Shown: one piece after another, positions 18,962 through 57,957 of the stretch
Numbering within the stretch: the first letter of the stretch is position 1
Layout: each line of letters opens with the position of its first letter
Assembly: GCF_021869535.1 (NCBI RefSeq)
Contig: NW_026262690.1
Span: 15,438,001-15,502,000 of the forward strand
Reading direction: 5' to 3'
Length of the DNA stretch: 64,000 bases
DNA from: Mytilus californianus
Lineage: Eukaryota
Notes under the pieces: generated by a model
What the model was told of the DNA's origin: nothing
Databases searched by the model: none
What the model saw: only the letters and a program-made list of their open reading frames with translations
Made by a program: the position numbers and the translations under genes

Positions 18962-20248
18962 TGCGCCTATGTGCGACGTATGGGGTGATGGAAAAAATGA
19001 TATAAAATGAAAAATTCTTTCGAAATTCTTGAAACATCTTGTCCCTATGAAAACAAGTACTCCGAAAGTAATTGTTTATGTTTCACCCATGCATTAACAT
19101 TTCGATAAAAACTATAATTTCTTAATAATGTTGAAAGCTGGTTTCTAAAAATGTTAAACTTTCCAGAATAACTTAATTTCAAGTTAGCACTTCACTACTA
19201 CACGACTAATATCCAAGAAATGAAATTGGATGAACAATTGTGAATGAAAATGACAAATTAAATGATTTCGGTTTCTCAAGTATTTTCCTGATACAGTATG
19301 GTAATTACCCAAAATGGTTAGTTGTAGCTGTAACACTTTGACTAGCAGATCAATAAGCTATTTTAGACTTATAAACTTCAAAACACCCCAAAATGTTTGA
19401 ATTATAAAATCTTCAAGAAAGTTTAAACATGTGAAGATTTTTTACAAATACTTCCAAATAAAGATGTTATAGCTTTTAGTAAATTTAGAACACCAAATCA
19501 CAATTTATCAATCGAAAGAGGTCGATGGACACATGTAGAAAATGTGCACTTTGCAATGGTGACCTATAGTGGCCAAGGTCTACGTTATTTGTCTCTGGTG
19601 GATAGTTGTCTCATTGGCAATCATACTACATCTTCTTATGTTATATATTATATCTGTAGGTACTCTTAAACAAGTAACAGGCATCATATCCGATATGTGG
19701 AGATTGTTGTATGCATTTGTGCAATCTGCCTCCAGCTTTTCTAGTTTAAACGAAATATATTTATAGATATAAATACACATATTGAATGTGCATGAGTTTT
19801 GTGATTCTACTGTATGAAATCGAAGCATTTTCATTTTATGCAGGAATCATGAATTCAATGGCTATAAATAAGAGGTTTCTTGTTTTTTAAATAGTCCACA
19901 ATGATTATCACAGCAGGTTATTTTTTTAAATGAAGTTTGCTGATTTGATGTGAAGAGCCATTTTACAGAATATGTTAAAGATCCACTCGTATTTGACACA
20001 TAAATCTGGAACCCTGAGTTTTTCATTCCAAGTTCTGTTGTTAACTCTATGTTGTTAATTTTTGGAATTTTCTTCCATTTCCAACTTCGAGATATTGACC
20101 TTAATTCCTTATTTAAAATTTTGGGTACACATTATTGATTTTTATTTTACGCATGGAGACTCCACGACAAACACATGAGCTATCATGACATCAGCTGCTT
20201 GAGCGAACTATAAAAATGAGCAAAAAGCCTCTGATTTCTGGCTAACAT

Positions 20249-20511
20249 TTATTTGCCAATTACTTCATTACCAAACTCATTTGGTATTGTTTCACAGATA
20301 AAGTTTCGACGTTCTTCGCAGTTGTCATCACTCCATTTGTATCCCCTATGTAGATCAATAAGAGCACAGTGTTCATAGTAATTTGTATTGTCTGGTTCTG
20401 TAGATGCCCAGTTCGAGTAAGAAAACTTGTGCTTGCTTGGTAACCATAACCAGTTGCCCTCACTGGCAAGATCGGATGCTCCTATCCAAAATAACCCAGG
20501 ATTATAGTTTC
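20249..20511 (-). CDS. C-type lectin domain C-terminal exon
   Basis: gttttcag|..NYNPGLFWIGASDLASEGNWLW...YSNWASTEPDNTNYYEHCALI...WSDDNCEERRNFICE...*. WIG, EPD, WSD and FICE motifs present; AATAAA at 20146-20141. Confidence 0.93.
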
Positions 20512-23500
20512 CTGAAAACAAATATTTAAAAGTAAGCTGTTTATCTCTCGTAAACCAGCAATTGAAAAGCAAGAAGTCAATTCAGATGGCATTCTTTATC
20601 TTATTTTAAACTGTAAGCCTGTTTACAAATTTATTTTTCTTATAGTATATGCATACTAAAGTCAATCTTAACATTGTGTGACAATACCTTAATTTTACGA
20701 ATGAAATGAGATACTTGGACGTAATTTATAGTTCTTTATTTGAGAGTCTGGATGGGGGATCCTTCAATTCTGTATTCTTTAATTTTTAAAGCCATTTTTC
20801 TCTATTCTGTAAAAAAAATTGCCTGCTATACTCTATTCTTTATATTTTAGCACCCCATTATTCTCTATTCTTTATTTTCTTGGCCTATTTTTCTCTATTC
20901 TTTATTTTGTTAGCCCTTTATTCTGCACATTTTGTCCATTATTCTCTGTTCTATAAACCCTATCCACACCCTCTTATCTGCTAGTATAGAAATCATATCT
21001 TCTTGCATTCTAAATCTGACATTGCGCTGACAAACATATTTCATACAAAAAGTGCTGAAAGTTACGATCATGTACAATACCCAAATTAACGTATATATTA
21101 CAAAATAAAAATATGTAACATATCAGTCTTATTACAAAGTAATCACGTAACCCAACCTGGACAACATTTAAATAAATCACGTGATCCAACCAGGACAACA
21201 CGACATAATTATAAATCCCTAGTGCGGTAAGTAGGTTAAATTGCGTGGTCAGTCTTTTGTTTTTTAAATTGTTCTGGAGCAAGAAAAATTTTAAACAGGA
21301 GATGTCTTATGGAGAAAAAAAAACCATAATTTTATGGGCTTTTTTAAATTACACTTGCCAAAGCTGAATAGTTTTGTTGTTTTTGTGTACTTGTCATCTT
21401 TGATGCTTGTTTATTTTTTACAATGAAAATCACTTATTATAATAATACTGAAAAAAAAACATGGGAAAACGTTCTACTGCTAGTAAGAAGAACACAATAG
21501 GAAATCATTATAAATCAAACATTGGAAAACGTTCTACTGCTAGTAAGGAGAACACAATGGGAAATCATTATAAATCAAACATTGGAAAAAGTTCAACTGC
21601 TAGTAAGAAGAACACAATGGGAAATCATTATAAATCAAACGGTTAACTGACCACAATATGCGATTCAGAACTGTAAGAAAAATGGCTTTAATAATTTCTT
21701 TTAGTTTTAAAAAGAAATTTTGGAGAATACTACTGTATAGCTACACCAAGGTTAATTGACGGACAATTTTATTAAGTAGAAAAATTGTTTTACGAGGTTG
21801 TGTTTGGTATCTAATAAAGAGTTAGTCACAGTCATATCAAAATATCAATTCTACATAAATGACCACCTCTTTTCACTTTCCATTTTCCTGTAGCTCCAAA
21901 ACCAGTGGAAAATGCGACATAGTTGACATTATGTGGAGCTGTGTCGTTCCAAGTGAGAAAGGTCTGCTTGCCGACGTCATTTCCTTTTCCAACCTTAATG
22001 ACATTATTGGTCCAGCTGACCCAAAATGACGAATAGTTCTTACAGTCTAAAGGATGCTGTTGTTGAACGTTTGTGTCCATGTGTGCACATTGCTTACAGT
22101 CTGTGAAATAAAGCAGTACGTACTACTTAAACAGGAAACCTTTTATTTAGTATGTGTGTGTCGATCATAGAGATAATAATAATAATAATAATAATAAAAA
22201 ATAATAAAGAAACGAATTTTGTATGCACTTTTGATAATTAAATTCTTTCATTTTGATAAAAGATTATGTTTTTAAGGTTTTCTGTAGCAAAAATATGGGG
22301 TCTTATACCTGTTCTGAAATAAATGGAGATATGGTTTTGTAAAAAAAAAACAATAAAAAATCTGCGTTGGAACTGTCAAAATGTTTTTATTGTTTGGTTT
22401 GTGTATGATTCTACAGATTTTTTTAAATGGGATGTGCAAGGTGTCTCACATTTTTCACAGATGTTACTATGATAGCATCTACACTGCAGTAAGATTATTT
22501 TACTGAAAATAGGTTATAACCTTTTTATGATCGGGCTGCTTTCTCATTGACATATATGCCACAACTCTGTAAATGCATAGACTACGGGTATAATCTATAG
22601 AAAGTCCATAATAAACATCAACGATGGTCGTTTAAATCGTTACCAGTAAATTCATTCAAGATATAAAAATTCAGAAAAAAGAAAACGTTGATCCACGGTT
22701 TTTTTTTCACAACCAGGCCACCCAACTCCATAGCAAACAGTTTTGCTGGATGCAAAAACCCATTACTTTTTATCAATTATTGCACATCATGAATCTCACA
22801 TGACTCCACGTACCTCTAATTACAGATTGATGGTCTCCCCAACCACCAATGACAATCTCATACGTGTCACGTGAATCCACTCCTTTGTCTTTAGATAGTG
22901 CAATATGGGCATCATTACAAGCCATAACTTCGAAAGATATCGATGTTTGACCTCTTACATCAATTCCGTTATCCATGATGTAGTGGTAGTGATAATTATT
23001 CTCAGTAGATATAACATAGTTACTTTCTAAAAATGAAAATACAGATCAGACAAATATAAATGATAAAATTCAGTTTATGGTAGATGAACACTGAAAATAG
23101 ACAAATCTACTTTTTACCCAAATCTATGCCAAATAGAGATGTCGTTTCATGTCATGTCATGTAATTGCATAGCATTAGCATACTATTAGCATATTAACTT
23201 ATCATGTCATAGCATAGAATAGCATATCATAGTATAGCATAGTATACCATAGCATAGTATAGCATATCTGTCATGTCATGTCATATCATATCTTGTCGGA
23301 AAATTGAATGCTTTGTAAATGAATAATTATAACTACTTTTAGCTATCCATCGTATTACCTGAAATAAATGATCTCAATTTTTCACTGTTTGACTTTCCCA
23401 AATCTTGCTCTACAGTGTACCTGGTGACTTATTTTAAAAACACACTTTTTGTGCCTACACAAATCATATCATACTTTTTTGAACCACCACTGGGTCGGTA

Positions 23501-26500
23501 CCACTGCTAGCTAACTGTCTGTGGTTTTGATTGTTTGGTTTTATATTTAACTTGCCATACTTTTGGTATTGAGCGCACCTGATGAAAGGTTATTTCAGAA
23601 ACTGTGCGTACATAAATCATATTATACATTTTACCGTGATAGCGACTAGATATCTGAGCTTCAAGGAAAGCTTGTATGTCGGCGTCAGTTATTTGAGGCA
23701 ATGTTCCGCCAACTATACTACAATATTCCTAGAATGTATAACATAATACTGTAAACAAAACAAAAGATTAAAAAAAAACCAAAACCCTATCGTCTCATTA
23801 AGAAGAAAACATAGTGAATGTATCATGAAAACTAAAAATTAGCGAATGAATAGTTACTATCAAAAACTTTTGATATCCTGTGTATCCGATGAAGCTAATG
23901 TTAGAAACTTTTGATATCATGTGTAACCGATGAAGCTACTGTCAGAAACTTTTGATATCCTGCGTACCGATTAAATATTTTCAGAAACTTTTGATATCCT
24001 GCGTAACTGATGAAACTACTGTCAGAAACTTTTGATATCGTGTGTACCGATTAAATACTTTCAGAAACTTTTGATATCCTGCGTAACTGATGAAGCTACT
24101 GTCCAAAACTTTTGATATCGTGTGTACCAGATGAAGCTACTTTCGGAAACTTTTGATATCCTTTAAGTACCCGATCAATCTTCTATCAGAAACGTTTGAT
24201 ATCCTACATAACCGATGAAGCTAATGTCAGAAACTTTTGATATCGTGTGTACCAGATGAAGTGACTATCAGAAAAACAAGTGTCATGACATGCATGAGAA
24301 CTGAAATTGGTGTTATACGTTTTTTTAAGGAAAATATTTGATACATCTGCCTTAATCCTAGCCATGCAAATCAATGGCGACTACATGATTGATGCACAGC
24401 AGCTATAATCTCTAATTCAGTATAACTATACAACAATTGAAAAGGTTTATATCACGTAACCATCCACTTAAGACAGCTATATATGCATGTGTATAGATTT
24501 ATATTGTTTCCAATATTTCCGTCCTCTTTTTATAGAATTCAAATAGAGTTAGGTATATATCACTTGTGTTTTTTTTATTCTGTTTTGTTTTTATTTTGTT
24601 GTTTATTGTTTTTTTAAATTTGTATTTCCGCAAACATATATGCTGTAAATGTTTAATGACAATAACATTGATTTGCTTCATGATTACAAATTTATCCTCC
24701 GATGACTTCAGTCGAATTCTTTATGAACCCTTTTTCTAATTTATTTTGATATATAAATCGCTCTACACTATACATTACTATTTGATGTATTAGCAATGGA
24801 CAGTGTTGCTGTTGTTGCATACCTCAATGACAAATACCTGCATGGTATTCATTTACATAAGGAAATGCCTGTACCAAGTCAGGAATATGACAGTTGTTTT
24901 CCATTCGTTTGATGTGTTTGAGCTTTTGATTTTGCCATTTGATAAATGACTTTCCGTTTTGAATTTTCTTTCGAGTTCGGTATTTTTGTTACATTACTAT
25001 TGACACAACGAGTATTGCGCGATAACTATAATTAGGTTAGACAAATTGAGTTCACGAAGTTAATGATTTTAACTCTACTCATTGTATTTATTTTACCCCT
25101 GCAAAGGGGAAGTATTCCTTTATGCTAGACGTGTGTTATATTTTTTGAAACTCTTGTTTAGTATATGTATTTATATTACTCTCGATTGGTGAATATATGA
25201 ATAAGAAGATGTGGTATGATTGCCAATGGGACAACTCTCCACCAGAGACACAATGACATAGACGTTAACAACTACAATATGTATAGGTCACCCTAAAGCT
25301 AATCTATTCCTGGGTAAGAAAATCCTAAGTATTTAAAAAAAAAATCAAAGTATTGTAAACAGTTTATTTATAATTATGACCATATCAATGTTGACTACTG
25401 GTCTGGTGATACCCTCGGGGAGATAAAACTCCACCAGCAGTGGCATCGACCACCCAGTGGTTGTAAATAAACTCATCATAGATACCAGGATTAAAATTGT
25501 ATCTGCCAGACTTGCATTTCGTCTACAAAAGACTCATCAAAGACGCTTGAATCAAAAAGGTTAAAACGGCCAAACAAAGTACGAAGTTGAAGAGCATTGA
25601 GGACCAAAAAATCCGAAAGGTTTTGCCAAGATTGCTCTCCCTGTCGACTGCCTTATCTCACATCTGTATGGACGATTGTTCTTCCTAACAACTACTTGAT
25701 CTCATGTCTGTATGACGTAAAGCGTTGACCGAATCACATTTGAATGAAGGCGGCGCTTCATACTAAAGATGTGCGCAAGAACAACACTTTTACAACCAAA
25801 TAAAATTATAAAAAAGAAGCATTCAATTCTTATAACTGTTCCATTTTTTGCTACAACCATGAAATTAAATTTTATCATATACTTATAGAAAATAATGGTA
25901 TAATTGTACCCCATGATAAAACTAATTTGTACATATATTTGTTCATTAAATTTGAAGAATTGCTTTAGCCGTGTGATATGACTTTTGTTATCACCTGCTT
26001 CCGCTTTATATCAACTGCTTCCGTTTTATATCAACTGCTTCCGGTTATTAGCGCATGCTTTTCTGTAACGTTATCGTATGACAATTCGACGTCATTCGGC
26101 AAATTCCGGAAAATACACCTCAATGGTACGTATTTTGTGTAAAACATAACAAAGTTGGATGAAAAAAATATAAGGAATCAAGAAAATATATTATTAAAAA
26201 ATTCAAAACAAATATTACAACAAATGCATTTTTTCAAAGTTTTAAAAGTAGTTTTTGTCTGTATGTCTTCTGCTGAAGTATATATGATAAAAAGAACATA
26301 ACATGTCATTTTTCATATCAGACCCCTTATCAGCCCATGGTCAAAATCATCCCTCGAGCCTGTCGGCTCTCGGGCTGATATCATGACCTAGGGCTGATAA
26401 GGGGTCTGATATGAAAAATGCCATGTTATAATCTATATATTTCAAGCTTTTCGAGTGTTTTTCTATGCATTGTTTTAACACTGTCACGGATAGCACGTGC

Positions 26501-28442
26501 AGTCATAGCTGTTGTATTTTATACGGAGATAAGTGTGATATTCTAATAGCATGCAACGCTAATTTTGATTGGATGACGTCTGCCATCAATTTCACCGTTG
26601 GTGGTCGGAGTCATTGGCAACAACGTTGCGCAATCGCAGTCGACATTTACGGGGTATTTGGAATGTTTAAATTTGAGCATTTTAAGAGTATTGCATTTTA
26701 AGAATTGAATGCTTCTTTTTGTAACTTCATTGGGGTGTAAAAGCGTTGACCGAAGTACATTTTGTATGAAGCGCGGAAGCGCTTCATTCTAAAAATGTGC
26801 GAACGGTCAACGCTTTTACAACCCTATGAAGTTACAAAAAGAAGCATTCAATACTTATAATTACATTTTTTAGCTAGGATCATTAAAAAACACGATTTTT
26901 ATCAATTTTTTATTCAATTTACCTGTGCACTTTATTGTGGGACCTCGTGTACTCATGAATGATAAATTTCATTGTGTAATGAAGTTGATTAAGGAATAAC
27001 GCGAGATTGCAGTTAGCCAATCAGAATAACGTATTATAATGAAACATACATCTAATGTAATTATTAGAATAAGGATAATAGTACTGTAGTTAAAGAGTTT
27101 TGACATTTGCAAATGCAGATTGTCGAGTTATCAACCAGAAACACGTTTTCTGCAATTATTTCTGTCTATATATAGTATCTTAGGCCTTTACCTCGGACAC
27201 AGAGATCCAATAAGGGTAGGATTCTTTCACTCATTATATATGACAATACATGTATATTAAAGATAAAAAAGAAGATGTGGTATGATTGCCAATGAGACAA
27301 CTCTCCACAAGAGACCAAATGACACAGAAATTAACTATAGGTCACCGTACGGCCTTCAACAATGAGCAAAGCCCATACCGCACAGTCAGCTATAAAAGGC
27401 CCCGAAATAACAATGTAAAACAATTCAAACGAGAAAACTAACGGCCTAATTTATGTACAAAAAATGAACGAAAAACAAATATGTAACACATAAACAAACG
27501 ACAACCACTATATTACAGGCTCCTGACTTGGGACAGGCACATACATACAGAATGTGGCGGGGTTAAACATGTTAGCGGGATCCCAACCCTCCCCCTAACC
27601 TGGGACAGTGGTGTAACAGTACAACATTAGAACGAACTCTAAAAATCAGTTGAAAGATTTGTTTTAATCCAAAGTCAGGTTCTAGAGATCCGGCTAATCC
27701 TTAAAATTTTCTGCATTATTTCGGGCGATTTTTGGTTCAATTACTTTAACCTCCGACGTAATGACCTCAAAATCAATATAAGTTTCTTCTTTTATTATAT
27801 GTGACCATTTATCAAAGACTTTGTAAGGATGGTGTTGGATAGAAGGTATTTGATAGCAAAAATAAAGATGACTTAATACGGACAGACGAACGTATAGACG
27901 GACTGACAAACCACAGAAGGGACGCCTAAAAATTATACACCTACTCCATCGTTGCTTTGAGTATAAAAAAAAATTGTAGTATTTTTATATTACGTGTTTA
28001 TATGCACAAAATACACACATCGTAAATTCGTATAAGTATTATTATACTTTCGCAGCAAGGGTTTGGTCATGCAAATTTAAACTCATTGTTCGTTTGCAAA
28101 CATGTGTGTTAGCGCTAACATGCACGTTTTACACCTACATGTATGTCTACATACATATGCACACAAGCATACACGTGTAAATGTGTGCATGTGAACGGAG
28201 CTAAAATATATGTGTTCTCTTGCCTATTAAATGGTTGTTAAAAAAATTCTTCTTCTAAAGGCAAACACTTAAATTCTGTCGGGTGATCACAATTATCCGA
28301 AGTTTCTGGGTAAAACTAAATAAGAACAATTGCAAATAATGTTGCCTCACCAATGCTGACGCCCATGTTGTTTGAGACCCAACAAAACCATAGCATTTCT
28401 GGTTACCATTGTACTTAACAAAACCAGAAGGACATCCTGATC
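20249..28442 (-). CDS. C-type lectin with an internal farnesoic-acid-O-methyltransferase-like (Methyltransf_FA) domain; partial model, exons 28351..28442, 22814..23026, 21867..22100, 20249..20511
   Basis: The exons encode CTLD N-terminus, FAMeT part 1, FAMeT part 2 and CTLD C-terminus in that order. A bridging phase 0-to-1 lectin exon and a first exon were not found intact, so the locus may be a pseudogene in this haplotype. Confidence 0.75.
21461..21640. repeat. 60-bp tandem repeat, 3 copies, in the lectin gene intron
   Basis: Units at 21461, 21521 and 21581. Confidence 0.9.
21867..22100 (-). CDS. Methyltransf_FA (FAMeT-like) domain exon 2
   Basis: tatttcacag|DCKQCAH...PLDCKNYSSFWVSWTNNVIKVGKG...NVNYVAFSTGFGATGKWKVKR. 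FWVSW and FSTG.G..G.W motifs present. The phase-1 donor (gtggtc) is weak, so the 3' boundary is uncertain. Confidence 0.85.
22814..23026 (-). CDS. Methyltransf_FA (FAMeT-like) domain exon 1
   Basis: ttttcatttttag|..SNYVISTENNYHYHYIMDNGIDVRGQTSISFEVMACNDAHIALSKDKGVDSRDTYEIVIGGWGDHQSVIR G|gtacgt. FxVxACNDAHI and YEIVIGGWG motifs present; phase 1-1. Confidence 0.92.
23571..23610 (+). ncRNA. Degenerate hammerhead-like motif of a second family
   Basis: gcgcac-CTGATGA-aaggttatttca-GAAAC-t-gtgcgt. Helix I strands (gcgcac/gtgcgt) are complementary; the helix III/cleavage region appears deleted. Confidence 0.45.
23855..24277 (+). repeat. 39-43 bp minisatellite, 9 full plus 2 partial units, one EcoRV site per unit
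   Basis: Unit ctgcgtaaCTGATGAagctactgtcaGAAACttttGATATC; lengths 41/41/39/41/39/41/41/43/41. Confidence 0.92.
25503..25548 (-). ncRNA. Degenerate hammerhead ribozyme, same family
   Basis: Minus strand gcgtct-TTGATGA-gtct tttgt agac-GAAA-tgcaag-TC-tggca. Helix II intact; C3 and helix III mutated. Confidence 0.5.
26700..26865. mobile_element. Hairpin MITE; truncated copy at 25715-25835 and another hairpin at 26303-26428
   Basis: attgaatgcttctttttgtaacttcat...atgaagttacaaaaagaagcattcaat. Confidence 0.7.
27265..27655 (+). repeat. Near-complete copy of the most abundant interspersed repeat (agaagatgtggtatgattgccaatgagacaact family)
   Basis: Fragments also at about 1975, 18225, 19560, 25200, 34745, 39400-39770, 40480, 43310, 49190 and 59210. 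Confidence 0.8.
28351..28442 (-). CDS. C-type lectin domain N-terminal exon
   Basis: ttctattttgtag|GA-SGCPSGFVKYNGNQKCYGFVGSQTTWASAL|gtgagg matches the CTLD start pattern CPxG..CY.F....W..A. Confidence 0.88.
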
Positions 28443-28817
28443 CTACAAAATAGAAATGCAGGAAGTTGTGGTGAATACGTCAAGTAAAGGTATTTATGAA
28501 CAATCTTTCTGTTATCTACTCGAGCTTAATCGTGTTAGTTGTAAAAGACAAAAACAGGTAACATTACCGTGACATAAAAAAGAATGTTTCGATTACACAA
28601 AAAAGTAAATTTTTCGTGACACCAAATAGTAAGGACCACTGGGGTTGATCGATGAATAGAAATTTGGTCATGCGGCAATAAAATCCATGCTGAAGAGGTG
28701 CATCTGTTTGGTTGTGCGGGATGTACATCGCAGCCGCAACCGATTAAAAAAACCGATTGATCAAATTTTCAGAGCATTCTTTTTTTTCATTCTGAATGTG
28801 CCTGAAATATTGGCCAC

Positions 28818-29222
28818 TAGAAGAGAGGCGAAGGATACCAAAGGGACTCATAAGTCGAAAATAAACTGACAACTCTATGGCTAAAAAAGAAAAAAGACAA
28901 ACGGATAAACAGATAAACAACAGTACACAAAACACAACATAGAAAACCAAAGACTGAGCAACACGAACTCCACCAAAAACTGGGGGTGATATCAGGTCCT
29001 CCGGAAGGGTAAGCAGATCCCGATCGCCACATGTGGCACCCGTCGTGTTGCTCATGTTAGTACAAACCCAGTGATAAATCTAATTCGGTAGGTCACATTT
29101 TGGGAAAAGGGGACGGGATTGTAGTTACAACAATTTGAACATATCCGTTGTCATCTTTGAAATGGAAATTCCTTAACGTCAACCAACTAGTAATGGCGTC
29201 CGTAAAATTTGCGAAGGGACGA
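28818..29222 (-). mobile_element. Non-coding 3' part of the same PLE-derived repeat as 52640-52960
   Basis: Reverse complement of ...cccttccggag...atcacccccagtttttggtgg...ttttcgacttatgag. Confidence 0.75.
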
Positions 29223-30008
29223 TTTAGAAGTTAGGTTAACAACAATTAATCAATCTAGAAGTAAAATTGTCGTGCCATCAGAAAATAACAATACAATGAA
29301 ACAACTTCAACATCAGTCACTGTACCACTAAAAATAGTATAATAATGACATCAAAGAGTATAACATATATCGTGTCGTCAATAAATAACATAACTTTGAC
29401 ACCAAATAGTGACTCTTTCGCCCCGTCAATATGCACCATTACAGCGACATCAAAGTGTAAATCCATCGTGCCGTCAGTCCACATCAAAAAGTAAATAATC
29501 GTGCCGTAAATGAGACACAATATCACTATTGATTTTTTGCGTGATAATTTTCCAACTACAGCTACTCAACTGATAATGTTTTTTCCTTCGCCCTTTGATT
29601 AGCTTGTAGCTGAACAACTTTCTTCCGGTTTCAAAACCATAGATAATCTTTTATCTTGCCTCCTATACTTTTCTAGGAATATGATTGGAGACCGTGTATA
29701 TTCCATATTGGGTTAGTAGGCGGGGCTTATTTCAATACACGGTTAGTAGTGGTGTTACGTCCCTTTATAAAAACAACACGGCGTTGAGGAAAAATCTTTA
29801 AGGTTTCAACAGACGAAGAAATTGATGATGAACGATTGAAATAAATTCATAACACACATTTAAAGCTAACAAGTTGTTATTGTTGGCATTTGCTTTTGTA
29901 TAGACCAACAGAAGTAGGTTCTTTATACTAACGGTATTGATGACTTGATCACTTTGATAGGCCACTAGTCTAAATACCACATGTTAAGATAGTCGGTAAG
30001 ATAAATTC

Positions 30009-30148
30009 GTTACATAGTGTGTTAGTGACCTAATACGATATATATGGGGCCAGTAAATTCCATATGGGGATTCGAGCTTCGCTCTCACCCCATATGGAAT
30101 TTACTGACCTCATATATATCGTATTAGGTCACTAGCACACTATGTAAC
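30009..30148. mobile_element. Short hairpin MITE with arms of about 60 bp
   Basis: gttacatagtgtgttagtgacctaatacg...cgtattaggtcactagcacactatgtaac; a related hairpin lies at about 46315-46420. Confidence 0.8.
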
Positions 30149-30374
30149 TAATAAAATTACACCAAAGAATAAGTTTGTCATGGCGTCAATATATTTCATT
30201 AAAACGACATCAGAGTAAATTTACTCGTGCCGTCAGAAAATAACGTTATGTTGACATCGATGAGTAATTCTATCGTGCCGTAACATTACAGGGATATTTT
30301 CAATACTAATCAATAAGTAAGGCATTTATCTTTTGCAATCATATACTAGTAACTATCTTAAAACAAAAACGTGA

Positions 30375-31333
30375 TACTGTGACTTGACTGTAAGTGTTGC
30401 TCGCAACCTATTGCAACTTATTCAAAATTCTGACCAAATTGCAATTTGTTTTATAAAACCAAACTGTTCAACTGGTCAGAAATTTGAACAAACTACTGTA
30501 GAAAACCACAGTCAAATCGTGGAAGTGCAAGGTGATAAAATAAAGCATACTTACAATCCTATAAGACTTTAATTCCACTTCAATGTTATATTGAAAAATC
30601 AGTCTAACAGTTTGAATAAATTTTTTATTGTTATTGTCATGCTAAAGGTGATGGGTAGTAATTTTGAATTGCTATAAAAATGTCCAAACTAAGCTTTCAT
30701 ACAATTTTTCTTTCGAAAAGTCTTCTATATTCATAAGAATCAGACATCATTTGAATTAAAACATTTTATATTCAGTAAAATATGTGTAAAATTACAATAC
30801 GTGTTTAGTAAGTTTCCATGGGAGATAATCAATTTTTCTTTCGAAAAGTCTTCTATATTCAAAAGAATAATGTTTTAGGTTATCTCCAAAGGAAACTTAT
30901 TAACAACGTATTGTAATTTCACATATATTTTACTGAATGTAAGATGTTTTAATTCAAATGATGTCTAATTCTTATGAATATAGAACACTTTTCGAAAGAA
31001 AAATTGTATGAAAGCTTAGTTTGGACATTTTTATAGCAATTCAAAATTACTACCCATCACCTTTAGCATGACAATAACAATAAAATTTCTATACAAACTA
31101 TTAGACTGATTTTTCATAATAAAATTGATGTGGAATTAAAGTCTTATGGGATTGTAAGTATGCTTTATTTTATCACCTTGCACTTTCACGACTTGACTGT
31201 GGTTTTCTACAGCAGTTTGTTCAAATTTCTGACCAGTTGAACAGTTTGGTTTTATAAAACAAATTGCAATTTGGTCAGAAATTTGTATAAATTGCAATTG
31301 GTGGAGAGCAACACTAACAGTCAAGTCACAGTA
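30375..31333. repeat. Large foldback: two 455-bp inverted arms with a 49-bp spacer
   Basis: 30375..30829 is the reverse complement of 30879..31333, with scattered mismatches. The mirrored ORFs 30384+ and 31136- reflect this. Confidence 0.93.
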
Positions 31334-31974
31334 ACATTAGATCGTTTTGCGTCGATTCATCTAAAATATGAATGAAAAGATTCAAGCAAACTTGTGTTTA
31401 ACTCTTAGTTAGTGTAGTCTTGACAAGCTTATAAGAAATGACTTATCAACAGAAGTGGACTTTAGCATGTATTATTTAAGACGTACCTAATTGTTGGGTT
31501 GACGTCTGGACTGTAATGAAAGTTATAATAAACCAAGTCTTCCACATAATCAAGTGTATTTGTCTTATCTTATTTAAATTCAAATATATAAACGAAACGT
31601 GATGTCCATAGATTATCGCATTGTTCAGAAAATAGAGACATACAATCTAAATGGTTTTGAAATCAACATTCTTCACACTTATTTTTGACATTTTAACCTA
31701 TTATGTCTGTTTGTTTTGTTCACACATTGTTGTCAATATAATGGAATTTTAAGCGACTGTCATACAAGTGAGAGGTTTAGCTAGCTATAAAACCAGGTTT
31801 AATCCACCATTTTCTACATAAGAAAATGCCTGTACCAAGTCAGGAATATGACAGTTGTTTTCCATTCGTTTGATGTGTTTGAGCTTTTGATTTTGCCATT
31901 TGATAAGGGACTTTCCGTTTTGAATTTTCCCTGGAATTCGGTATTTTTGTTATTTTGCTTTTTTCCATACAAAC

Positions 31975-48374: not shown

Positions 48375-48757
48375 TCACCACAATTCCCTTATACCCATGA
48401 ACGTGTCATGACTATTTACGATATGTTGTGGATGTGAATGAACCGCATATAAAACATCCCCTTCTTTCAAAGAATATGCAGACCCTACATAATGAGCTCG
48501 CTTTCCAGCGGCACTTATCATTATACATTGGGCAGAATCGCTTTCAAGTATTGGCTGCGATTTTCCATTACTCCCTAGGAGAAAAATTTGAAGTGCTGTG
48601 CCATTGTGCATTCGATTTTCAGCCATTTCTGTGATCTGGCTATAAATAAAATACATCCTGTCTTTCATTATTGTAAATGTACCATTTGTAGGATCATAAC
48701 TTAGCGAACTATTTCCTGTTTTATTGATTTCTGTGTTTTGATTCCATCTGATACTGC
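48375..48757 (-). CDS. TNF-like ligand exon 4 (TNF homology domain)
   Basis: ggtttctttacag|..SIRWNQN...YDPTNGTFTIMKDRMYFIYSQI...YVGSAYSLKEGDVLYAV...HDTFMGIRELW*. Confidence 0.92.
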
Positions 48758-51700
48758 CTGTAAAGAAACCAAAAACAAAATTACAATATTTTTCGGCACA
48801 TACTGTTGAAATAATCTTGACATAACAAAAAACTTTCAGCTTCAGTAGCGGATCCAGGAAATATGTGAGTTATATAAATAAACCAGATATGTGGATACAT
48901 GTTCCTGAAACAGAATACTATACCTGATAGGCACTATTACCACCAGACATCCATTGATAATTTATAGATATTTAATGAGACACTAGATTCCATGATTATA
49001 CACAGAGCGACCACGAGGCAGTTGATATTTTTCATTACCCGTTACAAATTGATCTATAAAGCCAGTCGGTTATTGCACACTTCAGTTTTCTTTTAACTGT
49101 CTATAATATCAATTTTCGACATTTTTTTAATTAAGTACAGTCCAGTAGATATCGATAAACAGGGTGTTACCTAAAATTAAACCAAAGAAATAGGAGTTAA
49201 TTGCCAATGAGTCAACTATCAACCATAGACAAAACAAGACGTGGATGTAAGCAACTATAGGTCATCATCAGGCCTTAAACAATGAAAACCCATACCGTAT
49301 AATAAACATATAGCGTATCGCCTGTCAACAGAACCAACAGTAATGACTGTAATCGTATCGTCCAGTAATCTAACGAGATTTATAGCAATAGTTCTTTGGC
49401 ATGGACCTAATGAATAGTGTTAAAAAGGACGTTTTAGAACATTGGACAAAAGCATTATCAATCATTATGGCAAATGGCAGACGTCGTAAAACATACAGAA
49501 GCGCCATTGCTGCATTAGCCAAGTTGTGATCTTTATAGATTTGTAATAGAAAAACAGTATTTGGTATTTTTCGTTTGTTTGGTTTTAGTGATGTAGACTG
49601 TTAATGTTGTCCCAAGTTAAGTCCACCAACTGCCTCTGTGATATTAACATTTGACATAGTAATCTTAAAACCTATAGGAATCTTTTTCACCATCATATCA
49701 TACCATATATAGTATTTAAGAGTCCTGCAGCAGTAAAAATGTCTGTCACCCTGACGAGACCGGTTTCGTATTTTTTCTCGAATTTCTTACAAACGTATAG
49801 TTGTTTACATCCTTTTCTTTTTGTCTTTGGTGGATAGATGTGGTTGTCTCATTGACATTAATAACAAATCACCTTTTTTTTAATATTAAAGAGTTAAATT
49901 TTAGTACTGATACCCAAAAATTAGTGATTCCATTATCAACAGGGTATTATAATGTTGCAGGATGTATATGGTAGTTCACTGATGGCATCAGTCATGCAAA
50001 TATTTGTGTCCTTCGTCATTTTTGTTGCCCTGGTTTTGTCTGTTTTTCCTTGACTTATCTTTTTGATTTGTTGGTATTCAACTTGTCTCAGCTATGACAT
50101 CATTTATATTGTTTATTGGAAACTTCAGGGTACAGAATTATCCCAGCCATGTCAGGTACAATACTCTTTGTTATCTTCAATGGATTCTAGCACAAGGCTT
50201 CTTAATCGTCTTTGGTCTAAGGACTTCGTGTGTAGTATCCAATACCATTCTTGTCTATACATTCTCTGGCTTTGAAGCTAGTTTAATTTAATAATTTTAT
50301 TAAAAAAGGTTCATCACATAACATAGATGAGCATTCAAAGTTAAAACATTTGCAAGTGTTTATGCCATGGGATAGTCCACAAAATGTCTTTTTTTTTAAA
50401 CTCTAGTTAACAAAACCATTTCATCCGATACAAATTTTGCTGATACTTTCAAATCTTGAAAACACAACATTATAACTACTATACCTGAAACTTACAGATC
50501 CTTTTGTTCTCTGGTACCGTTAAATCAGACTGCATTCCATGGTATTCGTCAATATGTTTGGCATTTTTTGCTGCTGGAAATTGTATTTATTGAAGTATAT
50601 TTCATTATGTTCATAAAATACCTCTTTTTCTTTAGATCCCTTTTGCTATAATGTACGCAGATCTATATCCACAACATTGGCTGCAATATGTTATATGTGC
50701 TTTCGTAAATGCATCACAGTGTTCTTACTAATCTATTTATCCAAAGTGTTGTCAGGTATCTATTATCTGTGGCATTAGTATAATGCATTCAGACTTTTAT
50801 CTAAAGTGTTGTCAGTAATCTATTATCGATGGCTTTCGTATAATACATTAAGACTTTCATCCAAAGTGTTGTCAGTAATCTATTATCAATGGCTTTCGTT
50901 TAATGTATTCAGACTTTCATCCAAAGTGTTGCAAGGAACATATTATCTATGGCTTACGTATAATGCAATCAGATTTTTATCCAAATGTTGTCAGTAATCT
51001 ATTATCTGTGGCTATCGTTTAATGCATTCAGATTTTTATCCGAAATGGTATCAGTAATCTATTATGTGATGCTTTCGTATAATACATTCAGAATTATATC
51101 ATAGTGTTTGTCAGTAATCTATTATCTGTGGCTTTCGTATCATGCATTCTGACTTTTATCCATAGTGTTTGTCATCAATCTTTTATATGTGGCTTTCCTA
51201 TGATGCGTTCAGACTTTTATCAAAAGAGTTGTCAGTAATCAATTATCTGTGGCTTTCGTATCATGCATTCAGACTTTTATCCAAAGTGTTTTCAGTAACG
51301 TATTATCTATGGCTTTCGTATAATACATTCAGACTTTTATCCATAGTGTTTGTCAGCAATCTTTTATCTGTGACTTTCGAATGATGCATTCAGACTTTTA
51401 TCCAAAGTGTTGCCAGTAATCTATTATCTATGGCTTACGTATAATGTATTCAGAATTTAATCCAAGGTTTTGTCAGTAATCTATTATCCGTGGATATCGT
51501 TTAATGCATTCAGACATTTATCCAAAGTGGTATTAGATCTGTGGTTTTCGTATAATGCATTCAGACCTTTATCCAAAGTGTTCTCAGTCATCGTTTATCT
51601 GTGGCTTTCGTATAATGCATTCAGACTTAAATCCGAAGTGTTTCCAGTAATCTATCATCGGTTGCTTTCGTATAATACATTCAGAATTATATCATAGTGT

Positions 51701-54700: not shown

Positions 54701-57700
54701 AAGACTTACCACTAGCTTCAATACTTGTGTGTATGTCGTCGACTTACCACTAGGCTCAATACTTGTATTTATGCCGTGGACTTATCACTAGGTTTCATAA
54801 CTTGTATTTATGCCGTTAACTTACCACTAGGTTCAGCACTTTTATTTATGCCGCGGAATAAGTATACAGATGGCGCAGTTTTCCGACAAACAACGTTAGC
54901 ATAATTAAGTTTTTCTGAAAAAAAAAGAAAAAAAAATTATTGAGTTTATCAGTTATACTGTATAGAAACAACTTTCTTTTCTGAAGTTCTTGATTTTGTT
55001 ATTCAAAGGATTGAGATAAAGAGAAAAGCCCTATTACCAAAATAAATGTAACTGTTAAAGTGTGTTACGTCAGGAAGCTTGTAGGTGGTTGTGTTTTACG
55101 TCAGTAACATTGTTTTTGGTTGTGTTCTACGTCAGAAACCTTGGGAGTGGTTGTGTTTTACGTCAGGAACGTCAAGAACATCGTTAGTGGTTGTGTCTTA
55201 CGTCAGTAACCTTCTCAGTGGTTGTATTTCTACGTCAGGAACCTTGTCGGTGGTTGTGTTCAATGTCTTGAACCTTGTCGACGGTTGTGTTTTACGTCAG
55301 AAACGTCAGGAACCTTGTCGATGGTTGTGTTTTACGTCAGGAACCTTGTCGGTGGTTGTGTTTCACATCAATAACCTTCTCAATGGTTGTGTTTTACGTC
55401 AAGAACCTTGTAGGTGGTTGAGTTTAATATCAGGAAACTTGTCAGTGGTTGTGTTATACGTCAGGAACTTGTCAATAATTAAGTTTTTCTGAAAAAGAAA
55501 CAAAAATTCATTGAATATATCAGTTTCATAGAAACAAATTGCTTTTCTGAAATTCTTGATTGTATATATGTTATTCAAAGGATTGAGATAAAGAGAAAAG
55601 CCCAATTACAAAAAAATGAATTGTAACTGTTAATGTGTTTTACATCCTTCTCCATGGTTGAGTTTTACGTCAGGTACCTTGTCGGTGGTTTTGTTTTACG
55701 TCAGGAATCTGGTCGGTGGATGTGTTTTACGTGAGGAACCTTGTGGGTGCTTGTGTCTTACGTCAGGCACCTTGTCGGTGGTTGTGTTTTACGTCAGGAA
55801 CCTTGTGGGTGGTTGTGTCTTACGTCAGGCACCTTGTCAGTGGTTGTGTTGTACGTCAGGAACCTTGTCAGTGGTTGTGTTGTTCGTCAGGCACCTTAAT
55901 TGTCGATGGTTGTCGTTGTTTATATAAGTGCAGCTCTTCTTTGAGTCAGGAACCTTGTGGGTGGTTGTGTCTTACGTCAGGCACCTTGTCAGTGGTTGTG
56001 TTGTACGTCAGGAACCTTGTCAGTGGTTGTGTTGTTCGTCAGGCACCTTAATTGTCGATGGTTGTCGTTGTTTATATAAGTGCAGCTCTTCTTTGAAGAA
56101 TTTAATATGAACGTAGTCAAATTCAATCACTTCACATTTTGAATTCTTAAATCCATTAAATCTGGACGATGTTGTATTTGCACATTCCCTTTGTTGAAAA
56201 TCGTATTTGACCTCTAACAGGGGTGCGTTCAATATCATAGCTGCTACGTCGATTTCGACTACTGAACGTATAGCTAGCCTAGACGCTTAAAATAGATCTA
56301 GATAGCCTAAAAAATTCATTATATCTAGATAATCCAATTGGCGTCCGATAGGTTATTATTAATGACGTCATTTGGATAGCCTAGCTTTTTAGCATATCGT
56401 TCAACATAGATAGATATCTATGACATATCGGCTATCTAGCTGCTACGGCATTGAACGCAACCCTGGTCTTCAATTCTGGGTTAGTTACATTTTTGGCTGC
56501 TGTCACACTGTATCACTGTTCCACATTTTCTATTATTCATATTAAAAAAAACATAAAAACCAGCGTTGTACAACTATTGATCACATATATAATTATATAT
56601 AGCACTCAGGATCCCGTTGCTGTTGGACTGCCCGTCATCGATGGCTCAGTAGTCAATGTTGTGGTAATGACATGCTTTATAACAAACATTTTTAAATTAT
56701 CCTTTAATAAATTAAGTGATCATTAAAAAACTCAGGTTCCGACTCCAGCAGGCAACGTTGACCTTAGGTGGATTTGGCGTTTCCTATTAGTTCAACGTTG
56801 GACATATAGCTTCTCAAGTATTACAGTATAAATACACAAACGATTGGCTTTCATTTCAAATTTTTGGGGTCAGTGAGCGTTCCTATAGCTATTGAAAGTA
56901 TATCACGAAAAGCTCAGTCACAGAGCTATGCACTTGTATTTGAATTCACTTGCTTTAATTGAATATTATGCCATTTTATGTTATAAATATGTTTAGTATT
57001 CATTAGTGTACTGATCAATAAATCGGGGGATTTATGATAATGAAGGGGAGGGACTATGAGGGATCAACACAGGGTCCCGGCTGTCCTCAACTGAGCACCT
57101 ATGGTACTGATAAGCATAATGTGCTTAAAGTAATAAAGAATTGAATTATCAATTTTAAAATATTCATTAAAATGTTCAACTTATTATTTCAACCCTTTTT
57201 TTTTTAATTTCCTATATGGACTTTGGACAACAAGTACCTGGCATTATCTAGGCTACATACCTGCCATATATTGCATTTGAAGTTTTCTCATGTTCTGGAA
57301 AATATTCAAAATAAATGCAAATTAAATGCAAATTAAAGAATATTCAAAAAGGATGTATTTCATTTCATTTCTCTTTTGTAGTAAATTTCTCTTCTTTACT
57401 TTTGATTTTTATTGTGTTACTTTAGTTATGATGGCGGCTGCAGAATGTGAGTTTATTGCATACTATCTAAAATAGATTTCATATTTACTTTTACTTTCGG
57501 TTTTGATTTCTTAAAAACCCGTAACCACTGCCGACTTCAAAAACATTAAACATGTTAAATTAAAAAAATAAATTTAATATCATTGGACAAAAAACCCAAG
57601 AGTAATCCAAATATAATAAACATTTAAACTACTAGACACAAAGGACGAGATAACTAGGTCATAAACTGGGTTAAATCAATATATAACACTTACCTTATCA

Positions 57701-57957
57701 ATTTCGTCTGCAATATATTTTTCTGGCTTTATTCTATCGCATTGTTTTGTTTGGTCTGTTTTAACACACAATGAACGGTCAACATTAGGGGCAGGTATCA
57801 TATCCTTTATTGGCCCGTTTCTTAATGCAGTCCATGAAACCGAAACTGCAAAAATTGCAACTATCAACAAAATATTGAGTACTAACAACAGTAACTGAAG
57901 AATAGTCACACAATTGTCACTTCTTTCTGTTACATCCTGTTGTTTGGTTTTATCCAT
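48375..57957 (-). CDS. TNF-superfamily ligand (type II membrane protein); join(57694..57957, 57261..57294, 50496..50573, 48375..48757), 252 aa
   Basis: GT-AG exons with compatible phases (264+34+78+383=759 nt). Short cytoplasmic tail, one TM segment, stalk, then a TNF homology domain with AKHI, IRW, YFIYSQI, GDVL and TFMG motifs. Confidence 0.88.
50496..50573 (-). CDS. TNF-like ligand exon 3 (probable strand A)
   Basis: aatttccag|..AAKNAKHIDEYHGMQSDLTVPENKRI T|gtaagt; phase 1-1. AKHI resembles the AAHL strand-A motif. Confidence 0.72.
50740..51960. repeat. About 61-bp minisatellite in TNF-like intron 2
   Basis: Unit ttatccaaagtgttgtcagtaatctattatctgtggctttcgtataatgcattcagactt. Confidence 0.9.
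52158..52960 (+). mobile_element. Penelope-like retroelement fragment (degenerate RT plus 3' repeat)
   Basis: FRYEDDVLSLNNSKFGDYVERIYPIELEI, then (frameshifted) KTKLYDKRDDFSFPVVNFPFL..SNI..PAYGVYISQ. The 3' part matches the reverse-oriented copy at 28818-29222. Confidence 0.8.
54895..56096. repeat. Higher-order repeat: two blocks of (AT-rich spacer of about 165 bp plus 29-30 bp array), including a 152-bp tandem duplication
   Basis: Spacer at 54895-55060 and 55470-55640; unit ggttgtgttttacgtcaggaaccttgtcggt; 55793..55944 matches 55945..56096. Confidence 0.88.
56218..56465. mobile_element. MITE with 16-bp TIRs
   Basis: caggggtgcgttcaat / attgaacgcaaccctg (1 mismatch). Confidence 0.7.
57261..57294 (-). 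CDS. TNF-like ligand exon 2 (34 nt)
   Basis: attttccag|NMRKLQMQYMA G|gtatgt. Supplies exactly the phase 0-to-1 change required. Confidence 0.75.
57694..57957 (-). CDS. TNF-like ligand exon 1 (cytoplasmic tail, TM helix, stalk)
   Basis: ATG at 57957 (GAAAATGG). MDKTKQQ...CVTILQLLLLVLNILLIVAIFAVSVSW...EIDK|gtaagt. Confidence 0.85.

What the first reader, a model, noticed from the sequence alone, without database searches (positions are those of the whole stretch)
20249..28442. C-type lectin domain split in two by an inserted FAMeT-like (Methyltransf_FA) module
Seen: along the minus strand the exon order is CTLD start (CPSGF..CY..TWASAL, 28351-28442), FAMeT exon 1, FAMeT exon 2, then the CTLD WIG..EPD..WSD..FICE exon. 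No second CTLD N-terminal exon was found between FAMeT and the last exon. The FAMeT block starts and ends in phase 1, the same phase as the acceptor of the last lectin exon. Inference: a symmetric 1-1 module was shuffled into the intron between helix alpha2 and the WIG strand. This gives either a nested domain-in-domain protein or a cassette that can be skipped to restore a plain lectin. Methyltransf_FA domains usually sit beside other domains, not inside them.
Basis: partly seen in the sequence, partly recalled or inferred. Interest (0 to 1): 0.7.

Follow-up and report, generated by a model that had tools for sequence, protein, structure and literature searches.

The report
Mussel lectin with nested FAMeT-like domain
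This is a real, intact six-exon mussel gene for a secreted C-type lectin whose lectin domain is interrupted by a complete FAMeT-like beta-sandwich domain; the layout is conserved across bivalves and matches the scallop lectin AiCTL-6, so it is a genuine domain-within-a-domain but not a new protein family.

Summary
However, exon 28351-28442 ends in phase 0, so it cannot join the phase-1 FAMeT exon directly. A missed lectin middle exon (23635-23728, phase 0 to 1) and a signal-peptide exon (31487-31547) complete a 957-nt, 318-codon reading frame.

A 982-nt spliced transcript contig from a related Mytilus maps without gaps onto all six exons, with pN/pS of about 0.15. Proteins of 304-321 aa with the same layout occur in mussels, oysters, scallops, ark clams and venerid clams. 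[quoted passage not shown]

The introns flanking the insert are phase 1 in mussel and oyster. A plain lectin paralog has a phase-1 intron at the same position.

An AlphaFold model of the M. coruscus ortholog re-forms a complete lectin fold around the insert (Z about 20, rmsd 1.5 Å). The insert alone folds as a concanavalin-A/galectin-like sandwich and is the most conserved part of the protein.

I found no skipped isoform. The one true RNA run showed no expression. The same scan noted WSC-in-lectin insertions elsewhere in this genome.

The parts
31487..31547 (-). Exon 1 coding part: ATG at 31547, 20 codons of signal peptide plus 1 base (ends in phase 1). The 5' UTR reaches at least 31561.
   Evidence: The cDNA contig L025 aligns to 31561-31483. 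Sequence and GT donor were read. It is 100% identical to M. coruscus P0185 residues 1-22.
28351..28442 (-). Exon 2: lectin N-terminal part (long-form cysteine pair, strand beta1, start of helix alpha1). 92 nt, phase 1 to 0.
   Evidence: Splice sites and frame. cDNA L025 positions 73-168 align here.
23635..23728 (-). 94 nt, phase 0 to 1.
   Evidence: ORF listing and sequence with ag|GAA ... CACG|gtaaaa. cDNA L025 positions 167-257 align here.
22814..23026 (-). Exon 4: first half of the Methyltransf_FA (FAMeT-like) insert. 213 nt, phase 1 to 1.
   Evidence: Pfam PF12248 positions 1-63, E 6.3e-15. Splice sites. cDNA alignment.
21867..22100 (-). Exon 5: second half of the FAMeT-like insert. 234 nt, phase 1 to 1.
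   Evidence: Pfam PF12248 positions 72-137, E 8.5e-16. Splice sites. cDNA alignment.
20249..20511 (-). Exon 6 coding part: lectin C-terminal part (WIG strand, EPD and WSD motifs, cysteines C2-C4) and the stop codon. It starts in phase 1. The 3' UTR continues below 20249.
   Evidence: Pfam PF00059 positions 42-107, E 1.6e-10. Acceptor cag|GA read. cDNA aligns down to 20240.

Best explanation
The region encodes one six-exon gene for a secreted protein of 318 aa. The protein is a signal peptide followed by a single C-type lectin domain, with a complete FAMeT-like (Pfam Methyltransf_FA) domain of about 150 aa inserted between helix alpha2 and the WIG strand.

Origin. The insert sits exactly in the phase-1 intron that plain mussel lectin genes carry at that position, and it is itself bounded by phase-1 introns. 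It therefore most likely arose by exon shuffling into that intron before the bivalve lineages diverged.

Splicing. The insert is included constitutively.

Predicted structure. The two lectin pieces pack into a normal Ca-type lectin fold with EPD and WSD motifs. The insert forms a separate concanavalin-A/galectin-like beta-sandwich whose first and last strands emerge from the alpha2-beta2 connection.

Function. The gene is the Mytilus ortholog of scallop AiCTL-6, a hepatopancreas-expressed, infection-induced, Ca-dependent bacterial agglutinin.

Inference (not shown): the lectin part supplies Ca-dependent sugar binding, and the highly conserved sandwich supplies a second ligand-binding or assembly surface, giving a two-module pattern-recognition protein. 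The insert is not a methyltransferase.
For: - Exons, phases and splice sites.
- Pfam on single exons. Pfam on the ortholog P0185: Methyltransf_FA at residues 92-231 covers profile positions 1-138 of 140, and Lectin_C is found in two stretches. All 30 family members carry both domains.
- Spliced transcript: the Logan contig L025 (982 nt, one 318-aa ORF) maps colinearly and without gaps to all six exons at 92-96% identity. It has 48 mismatches over 957 nt and pN/pS of about 0.15. The FAMeT exons carry 4 nonsynonymous and 15 synonymous differences.
- Orthologs with the same layout: Mytilus trossulus, M. coruscus, M. edulis and M. galloprovincialis; Saccostrea and Crassostrea; Pecten, Argopecten and Ylistrum; Tegillarca; Mercenaria (full-length, 304-321 aa). 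Pinctada, Mizuhopecten and Mactra models carry both Pfam domains but are N-terminally truncated (242-259 aa). Many are carried on roughly 1-kb transcript-sized contigs.
- Intron positions and phases: identical in oyster, and they match a plain lectin paralog.
- AlphaFold model of P0185: pLDDT 81.6, pTM 0.76.
- Whole solved lectin domains superpose over model residues 23-309: 2ox9_A Z 20.4, rmsd 1.5 Å, 126 of 130 residues; codakine 2vuv Z 19.9.
- Insert alone: pLDDT 95. Best fold matches are CBM66 (Z 13.4), galectins, legume-lectin-like and SPRY domains.
- Mean pairwise identity across bivalves: insert 0.59-0.62, lectin parts 0.37-0.50.
- AiCTL-6 properties come from the review PMC12842671.
Against: - The only definite RNA run of the window's own study (X21, about 6% of reads sampled) showed zero depth on every exon between 20001 and 26000. 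Expression in this species is therefore not shown.
- The RefSeq model for this species (XP_052058950.1, 269 aa) omits exons 1 and 2.
- The fold evidence comes from predictions on an ortholog that is 94-100% identical per exon, not on the window's own joined protein.
- The role of the insert is inferred from fold and conservation only.
- I could not read the AiCTL-6 paper itself.
Confidence: 0.85

Rival explanations
1. The two FAMeT exons are an alternatively spliced cassette. A substantial share of transcripts skip them and encode a plain 169-aa lectin, so the gene switches between a plain and a nested form.
For: Both FAMeT exons are phase 1-1 and the flanking exons are phase-compatible, so skipping keeps the frame. 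The resulting junction would resemble that of plain paralogs, which show the same residues around the intron.
Against: A word search with the first 100 residues of the Mytilus protein, sized so that a 169-aa form was in range, found nothing. None of the 13 members of the Mytilus cluster, and no other listed cluster member, is a skipped form. The insert is the most conserved part of the protein. In oyster it is a single exon with the same constitutive layout in RefSeq models.
Confidence: 0.08
2. In this particular species the locus is silent or decaying, and only its relatives keep a working gene.
For: There was no RNA coverage of the exons in run X21. The species' RefSeq model is truncated at the 5' end.
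Against: All six exons are open with canonical splice sites. Comparison with a congeneric cDNA gives pN/pS of about 0.15 with no indels. Only about 6% of one run, of unknown tissue, was read, and AiCTL-6 is strongly tissue-biased and inducible (PMC12842671).
Confidence: 0.05
3. The nested layout is a gene-model artefact that fuses a lectin gene with a separate FAMeT-domain gene lying in its intron.
For: FAMeT-only genes are very numerous in this genome. Annotation pipelines do make chimeras here; for example, the M. edulis 429-aa model fuses the upstream TNF-like gene to lectin exon 2.
Against: Transcript-sized contigs of about 1 kb carry the uninterrupted full ORF in several species. AiCTL-6 is a cloned cDNA. 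The FAMeT exons have no start or stop codon of their own and are in phase with the lectin exons.
Confidence: 0.02

Closest known systems
AiCTL-6 of the bay scallop Argopecten irradians (ADD64826.1 / D7NLL2; Zhang et al. 2011, Fish Shellfish Immunol 30:17, PMID 20045059)
   Same: It has the same architecture: signal peptide, lectin N part, Methyltransf_FA, lectin C part. It is 307 aa against 318 aa, about 55% identical to the Mytilus ortholog, and carries EPD and WSD motifs (PMC12842671).
   Different: It is the orthologous gene in another order of bivalves. [quoted passage not shown] I could not read the paper, so I cannot say whether the insert was recognised there as a separate domain. The biochemical properties (Ca-dependent agglutination of E. 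coli, M. luteus and S. aureus; hepatopancreas expression) are known only for the scallop protein.
Plain three-exon C-type lectins of the same genome (e.g. paralog locus L020)
   Same: They have the same intron positions and phases (1 | N exon | 0 | middle exon | 1 | C exon) and similar residues on both sides of the last intron.
   Different: They have no module in the phase-1 intron. They are at most 46% identical in the C-terminal exon.
Methyltransf_FA (PF12248) domain proteins: arthropod FAMeT, CPAMD8, mollusc shell-matrix and FAMeT-only proteins
   Same: There is a full-length profile match. The domain is extracellular and non-enzymatic-looking, as in CPAMD8 and abalone shell proteins (PMC9363628, PMC6003135, PMC8194122).
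   Different: Here the domain lies inside another domain rather than beside it. This subfamily also has an invariant extra CxxC pair at the exon 4/5 boundary that generic FAMeT domains lack.
Concanavalin-A-like lectin/glucanase fold (CBM66, galectins, legume-lectin-like domains, SPRY)
   Same: The predicted fold of the insert matches: 4b1m_A Z 13.4, rmsd 2.7 Å, 133 residues aligned; galectins Z 10-12.
   Different: Sequence identity is only 4-14%. No galectin sugar-binding motif was tested. A shared fold does not show sugar binding.

Membership tests
C-type lectin-like domain (Pfam PF00059 Lectin_C) | Profile match above the curated cut-off | tested here: met
   Window exon 6 alone scores 42.1 bits against a cut-off of 22.6. 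Ortholog P0185 scores 51.9 bits in two stretches.
C-type lectin-like domain (Pfam PF00059 Lectin_C) | Four core cysteines (C1-C4) plus the long-form N-terminal pair, and the WIG strand | tested here: met
   Read directly from the sequence. Exon 2 has two Cys, exon 3 has one and exon 6 has three. FWIG is at the start of exon 6. The cysteines are invariant or nearly so in the 30-protein alignment.
C-type lectin-like domain (Pfam PF00059 Lectin_C) | Ca-site-2 sugar-binding motifs (EPN/QPD type tripeptide and WND) | tested here: met
   The variants EPD and WSD are present in exon 6, as reported for AiCTL-6 (PMC12842671). Actual Ca or sugar binding was not tested.
C-type lectin-like domain (Pfam PF00059 Lectin_C) | The double-loop alpha/beta fold forms as one domain | tested here: met
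   This was tested on the AlphaFold model of the ortholog P0185. 2ox9_A gives Z 20.4, rmsd 1.5 Å, 126 of 130 residues over model 23-309. It is a prediction on an ortholog, not a solved structure.
Methyltransf_FA (Pfam PF12248) | Full-length profile match above the cut-off | tested here: met
   Exons 4 and 5 score 55.6 and 58.4 bits against a cut-off of 24.2 and cover profile positions 1-63 and 72-137. P0185 scores 116.5 bits covering 1-138 of 140.
Farnesoic acid O-methyltransferase (enzyme) | Methyltransferase activity or a methyltransferase fold | tested here: not met
   The confident model of the insert (pLDDT 95) is a concanavalin-A-like beta-sandwich. All of the top 50 matches are lectin, CBM, SPRY or glucanase sandwiches. 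Activity itself cannot be tested here.
AiCTL-6-type 'long CTLD' lectins of bivalves | Signal peptide, lectin N part, FAMeT-like domain, lectin C part, about 305-320 aa | tested here: met
   The six window exons total 957 nt. Both domains are present in all 30 aligned members, including AiCTL-6 (P0208).
AiCTL-6-type 'long CTLD' lectins of bivalves | Ca-dependent bacterial agglutination and immune induction | not testable with these tools
   Known only for the scallop protein, from the review PMC12842671.
Alternatively spliced cassette | Symmetric phases, plus observed transcripts with and without the exons | tested here: inconclusive
   The phases are symmetric. Only inclusion forms were seen. 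No skipped form was found. The RNA run gave no coverage.

The most novel reading that the evidence does not exclude
The phase-1 intron before the WIG strand of bivalve C-type lectin genes may be a recurrent landing site for symmetric 1-1 modules. FAMeT-like domains land there in this gene. According to two unchecked earlier notes of this scan, WSC modules have landed in other lectin genes of the same genome. This would make a class of 'lectin-within-lectin' receptors. In the AiCTL-6 family, the concanavalin-A-like insert, which is more conserved than the host lectin domain, would be the main ligand-binding unit, with a specificity nobody has assayed.
Probability: 0.3. Interest if true: 0.6.

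Novelty: new member of a known kind. Interest (0 to 1): 0.42.

Why it matters
Insertion of a whole domain inside a C-type lectin domain is rare. Here the gene structure shows how it happened: a 1-1 module in a pre-existing phase-1 intron. The layout has been kept since before the main bivalve lineages split.

[quoted passage not shown] That domain is a normal lectin domain carrying a separate concanavalin-A-like sandwich. The so-called FAMeT domain in secreted mollusc proteins is therefore likely a binding module, not an enzyme.

Practically, the RefSeq model of this gene in this species lacks its first two exons. A Mytilus edulis model fuses the gene to the neighbouring TNF-like gene. Both can be corrected.

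Tried and rejected
- **Strict motif search.** Regular expressions for a lectin middle exon found nothing, because this exon has LPQI where most lectins have LA.I. A plain listing of minus-strand ORFs found it.
- **Reads.** The one definite RNA run had no depth on the exons. The 'RNA?' contig runs look genomic or unspliced: X1 contigs run from the exons into the flanking introns. Two contigs end within 2 nt of the exon-6 acceptor with 70 and 20 unplaced letters (X10 record 8, X3 record 16). This is compatible with splicing, but the partner was not shown. No splice junction could be read from this call, and only 20001-26000 could be laid (6,000-letter limit, one call).
- **Skipped isoform.** The search found nothing. 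This is weak negative evidence.
- **PDB sequence search with the insert.** No relative was found.
- **Membrane-anchored isoform.** This was suggested by the 429-aa M. edulis model and rejected. Its N-terminus belongs to the neighbouring TNF-like gene.
- **Own-genome searches.** No close paralog exists. The best hits are 41% identical for FAMeT exon 5 and 46% for lectin exon 6. The gene is single-copy here.
- **AiCTL-6 paper.** It is not held in the library.
- **Window's own joined protein.** The exons were searched one by one, and the M. coruscus ortholog P0185 stood in for folding.
- I re-ran it from files only.
Full report
**1. What is in the sequence**

The window is AT-rich eukaryotic DNA. 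It is 100% identical to two Mytilus californianus RefSeq proteins wherever they map. XP_052058950.1 maps to exons 3-6 of the gene discussed here. LOC127737548 maps to 57694-57957. The window is therefore that species or something very near it.

Each was scanned on its own against Pfam:

| Exon (window) | Pfam match | E-value |
|---|---|---|
| 22814-23026 | Methyltransf_FA positions 1-63 | 6.3e-15 |
| 21867-22100 | Methyltransf_FA positions 72-137 | 8.5e-16 |
| 20249-20511 | Lectin_C positions 42-107 | 1.6e-10 |
| 28351-28442 | none (30 codons, too short), but it has the CP.GF...C.Y...TW pattern of a lectin N-terminus | - |

**2. The correction**

Exon 28351-28442 is 92 nt and runs from phase 1 to phase 0. 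It ends in helix alpha1, not after helix alpha2. Joined directly to the phase-1 FAMeT exon it would shift the frame into a stop. About 30 residues of lectin domain were also unaccounted for (profile positions up to 41).

A listing of all minus-strand open frames between the exons showed the missing piece at 23635-23728. It is 94 nt, with boundaries ag|GAA ... CACG|gtaaaa, phase 0 to 1. It encodes the C1 cysteine and helix alpha2.

A signal-peptide exon lies at 31487-31547, with the ATG at 31547 and ending in phase 1.

The six exons add up to 957 nt, that is 318 codons plus the stop.

**3. Transcript and orthologs**

A profile-free search with exon 5, a word search and cluster look-ups found full-length proteins of 304-321 aa carrying both Pfam domains in these groups:
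- Mytilus trossulus, M. coruscus, M. edulis and M. galloprovincialis;
- Saccostrea and Crassostrea;
- Pecten, Argopecten and Ylistrum;
- Tegillarca;
- Mercenaria.

Shorter, N-terminally truncated models (242-259 aa) with both domains come from Pinctada, Mizuhopecten and Mactra.

Many of these sit on contigs of only about 1 kb, the size of a transcript. One such contig is L025 (982 nt, run SRR26849180, one 318-aa ORF). It aligns colinearly and without gaps to all six window exons at 92-96% identity. It shows 48 differences over 957 nt: 30 synonymous against 18 nonsynonymous, pN/pS about 0.15. In the two FAMeT exons only 4 of 19 differences are nonsynonymous. The inclusion form is therefore a real mRNA in a close relative, and the gene is under purifying selection.

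[quoted passage not shown] According to the review PMC12842671 it has EPD and WSD motifs. It agglutinates E. coli, M. luteus and S. aureus in a Ca-dependent way. It is about 500-fold higher in hepatopancreas than in hemocytes and rises after bacterial challenge. The window gene has the same EPD and WSD motifs.

**4. Origin of the layout**

In Saccostrea echinata (locus L024) the gene has the same intron positions and phases: 1 | N exon | 0 | middle exon | 1 | FAMeT | 1 | C exon. The insert there is a single exon. The oyster locus carries two such genes in tandem.

A plain lectin paralog of the window's genome (L020) has 1 | N | 0 | middle | 1 | C, with similar residues on each side of the last intron. 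The insert therefore occupies exactly a pre-existing phase-1 intron. This is what exon shuffling of a 1-1 module predicts. The extra intron inside the insert is specific to the mussel lineage among the loci I read.

**5. Structure**

The M. coruscus ortholog P0185 (94-100% identical per exon) was folded with a 30-sequence family alignment. The result was mean pLDDT 81.6 and pTM 0.76.

Complete solved lectin domains superpose on model residues 23-309, spanning the insert:
- mouse scavenger-receptor lectin 2ox9_A: Z 20.4, rmsd 1.5 Å, 126 of 130 residues;
- the clam lectin codakine 2vuv: Z 19.9;
- lithostathine 1lit: Z 20.0.

In Foldseek these hits have target TM-scores of 0.83-0.88 over alignments of about 287 columns. 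So the lectin fold is predicted to close around the insert.

The insert alone (residues 83-233, 51-sequence alignment) folds with pLDDT 95 and pTM 0.90 into a beta-sandwich. Its best matches among 48,161 solved chains are CBM66 (Z 13.4, rmsd 2.7 Å, 133 residues), galectins (Z 10-12), legume-lectin-like domains, ERGIC-53 and SPRY domains. This is the concanavalin-A-like fold, not a methyltransferase fold. No solved structure is related to the insert by sequence.

**6. Which part matters**

Mean pairwise identity across 26 full-length bivalve proteins:

| Region | Mean pairwise identity |
|---|---|
| FAMeT insert, two halves | 0.62 and 0.59 |
| Lectin N-terminal part | 0.41 |
| Lectin middle part | 0.37 |
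| Lectin C-terminal part | 0.50 |

Some lineages have lost the EPD motif while keeping the insert nearly unchanged (Tegillarca, and one oyster paralog). The family also has an invariant CxxC pair at the exon 4/5 boundary that generic FAMeT domains lack. This argues that the insert is functionally central rather than optional.

**7. Skipping**

Skipping both FAMeT exons would keep the frame. I found no evidence that it happens:
- No protein of 55-175 aa shares words with the first 100 residues of the Mytilus protein.
- No listed cluster member is a skipped form.

The reads experiment was uninformative. The true RNA run X21 had zero depth on the exons in the roughly 6% of reads sampled. The other runs look like genomic or unspliced material. 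Expression and splicing in this very species therefore remain unshown.

**8. Verdict**

The exon list needed two additions, and the finding is not a new kind of protein. It is the mussel ortholog of a known, assayed scallop lectin, and it is annotated (under misleading names) in many bivalve genomes.

In the searchable literature I found no paper that describes the insert as a Methyltransf_FA or concanavalin-A-like domain nested in the lectin domain. I could not read the original AiCTL-6 paper.

Two earlier, unchecked notes of this scan report WSC modules inside lectin domains elsewhere in this genome. They are a lead for a more general pattern, not evidence for this report.

Noticed in passing
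window 48378-48761, 54823-54924, 57262-57303, 57694-57957 (minus strand): The upstream neighbour is a TNF-superfamily (THD domain, PF00229) type II membrane protein gene. It is 99-100% identical to M. californianus LOC127737548 at its first (57694-57957) and THD (48378-48761) exons. Its third exon ends in phase 1 with G|gtaagt, so it is phase-compatible with lectin exon 2. The M. edulis RefSeq model XP_071165394.1 (429 aa) fuses these TNF exons to the lectin. It is probably a read-through or chimeric model.
   Followed up: partly
window 23635-31547 (minus strand): The RefSeq model of this gene in this species (XP_052058950.1, 'ladderlectin-like', 269 aa) starts with two residues from elsewhere and then exon 3. 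It lacks the intact signal-peptide exon and lectin exon 2, which orthologs in four other Mytilus species include.
   Followed up: partly
window 20600-21000 and 24800-25800: Intronic stretches have very high depth in all four runs laid (up to hundreds of reads in the RNA run, with many mismatches and loose ends). They are dispersed repeats or transposon fragments, not exons of this gene.
   Followed up: no
window 21440-21650 (plus-strand frames): There is a short tandem repeat in the intron between exons 5 and 6. It is visible as repeated open-frame peptides of about 19 residues in the ORF list.
   Followed up: no
locus L024 10001-14903 and 19178-23352: Saccostrea echinata carries two tandem genes, each of 310 aa, with the same nested lectin/FAMeT layout. 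Crassostrea angulata likewise has adjacent loci LOC128180738 and LOC128180739. The window's genome has only one copy.
   Followed up: partly
I did not examine it.
   Followed up: no
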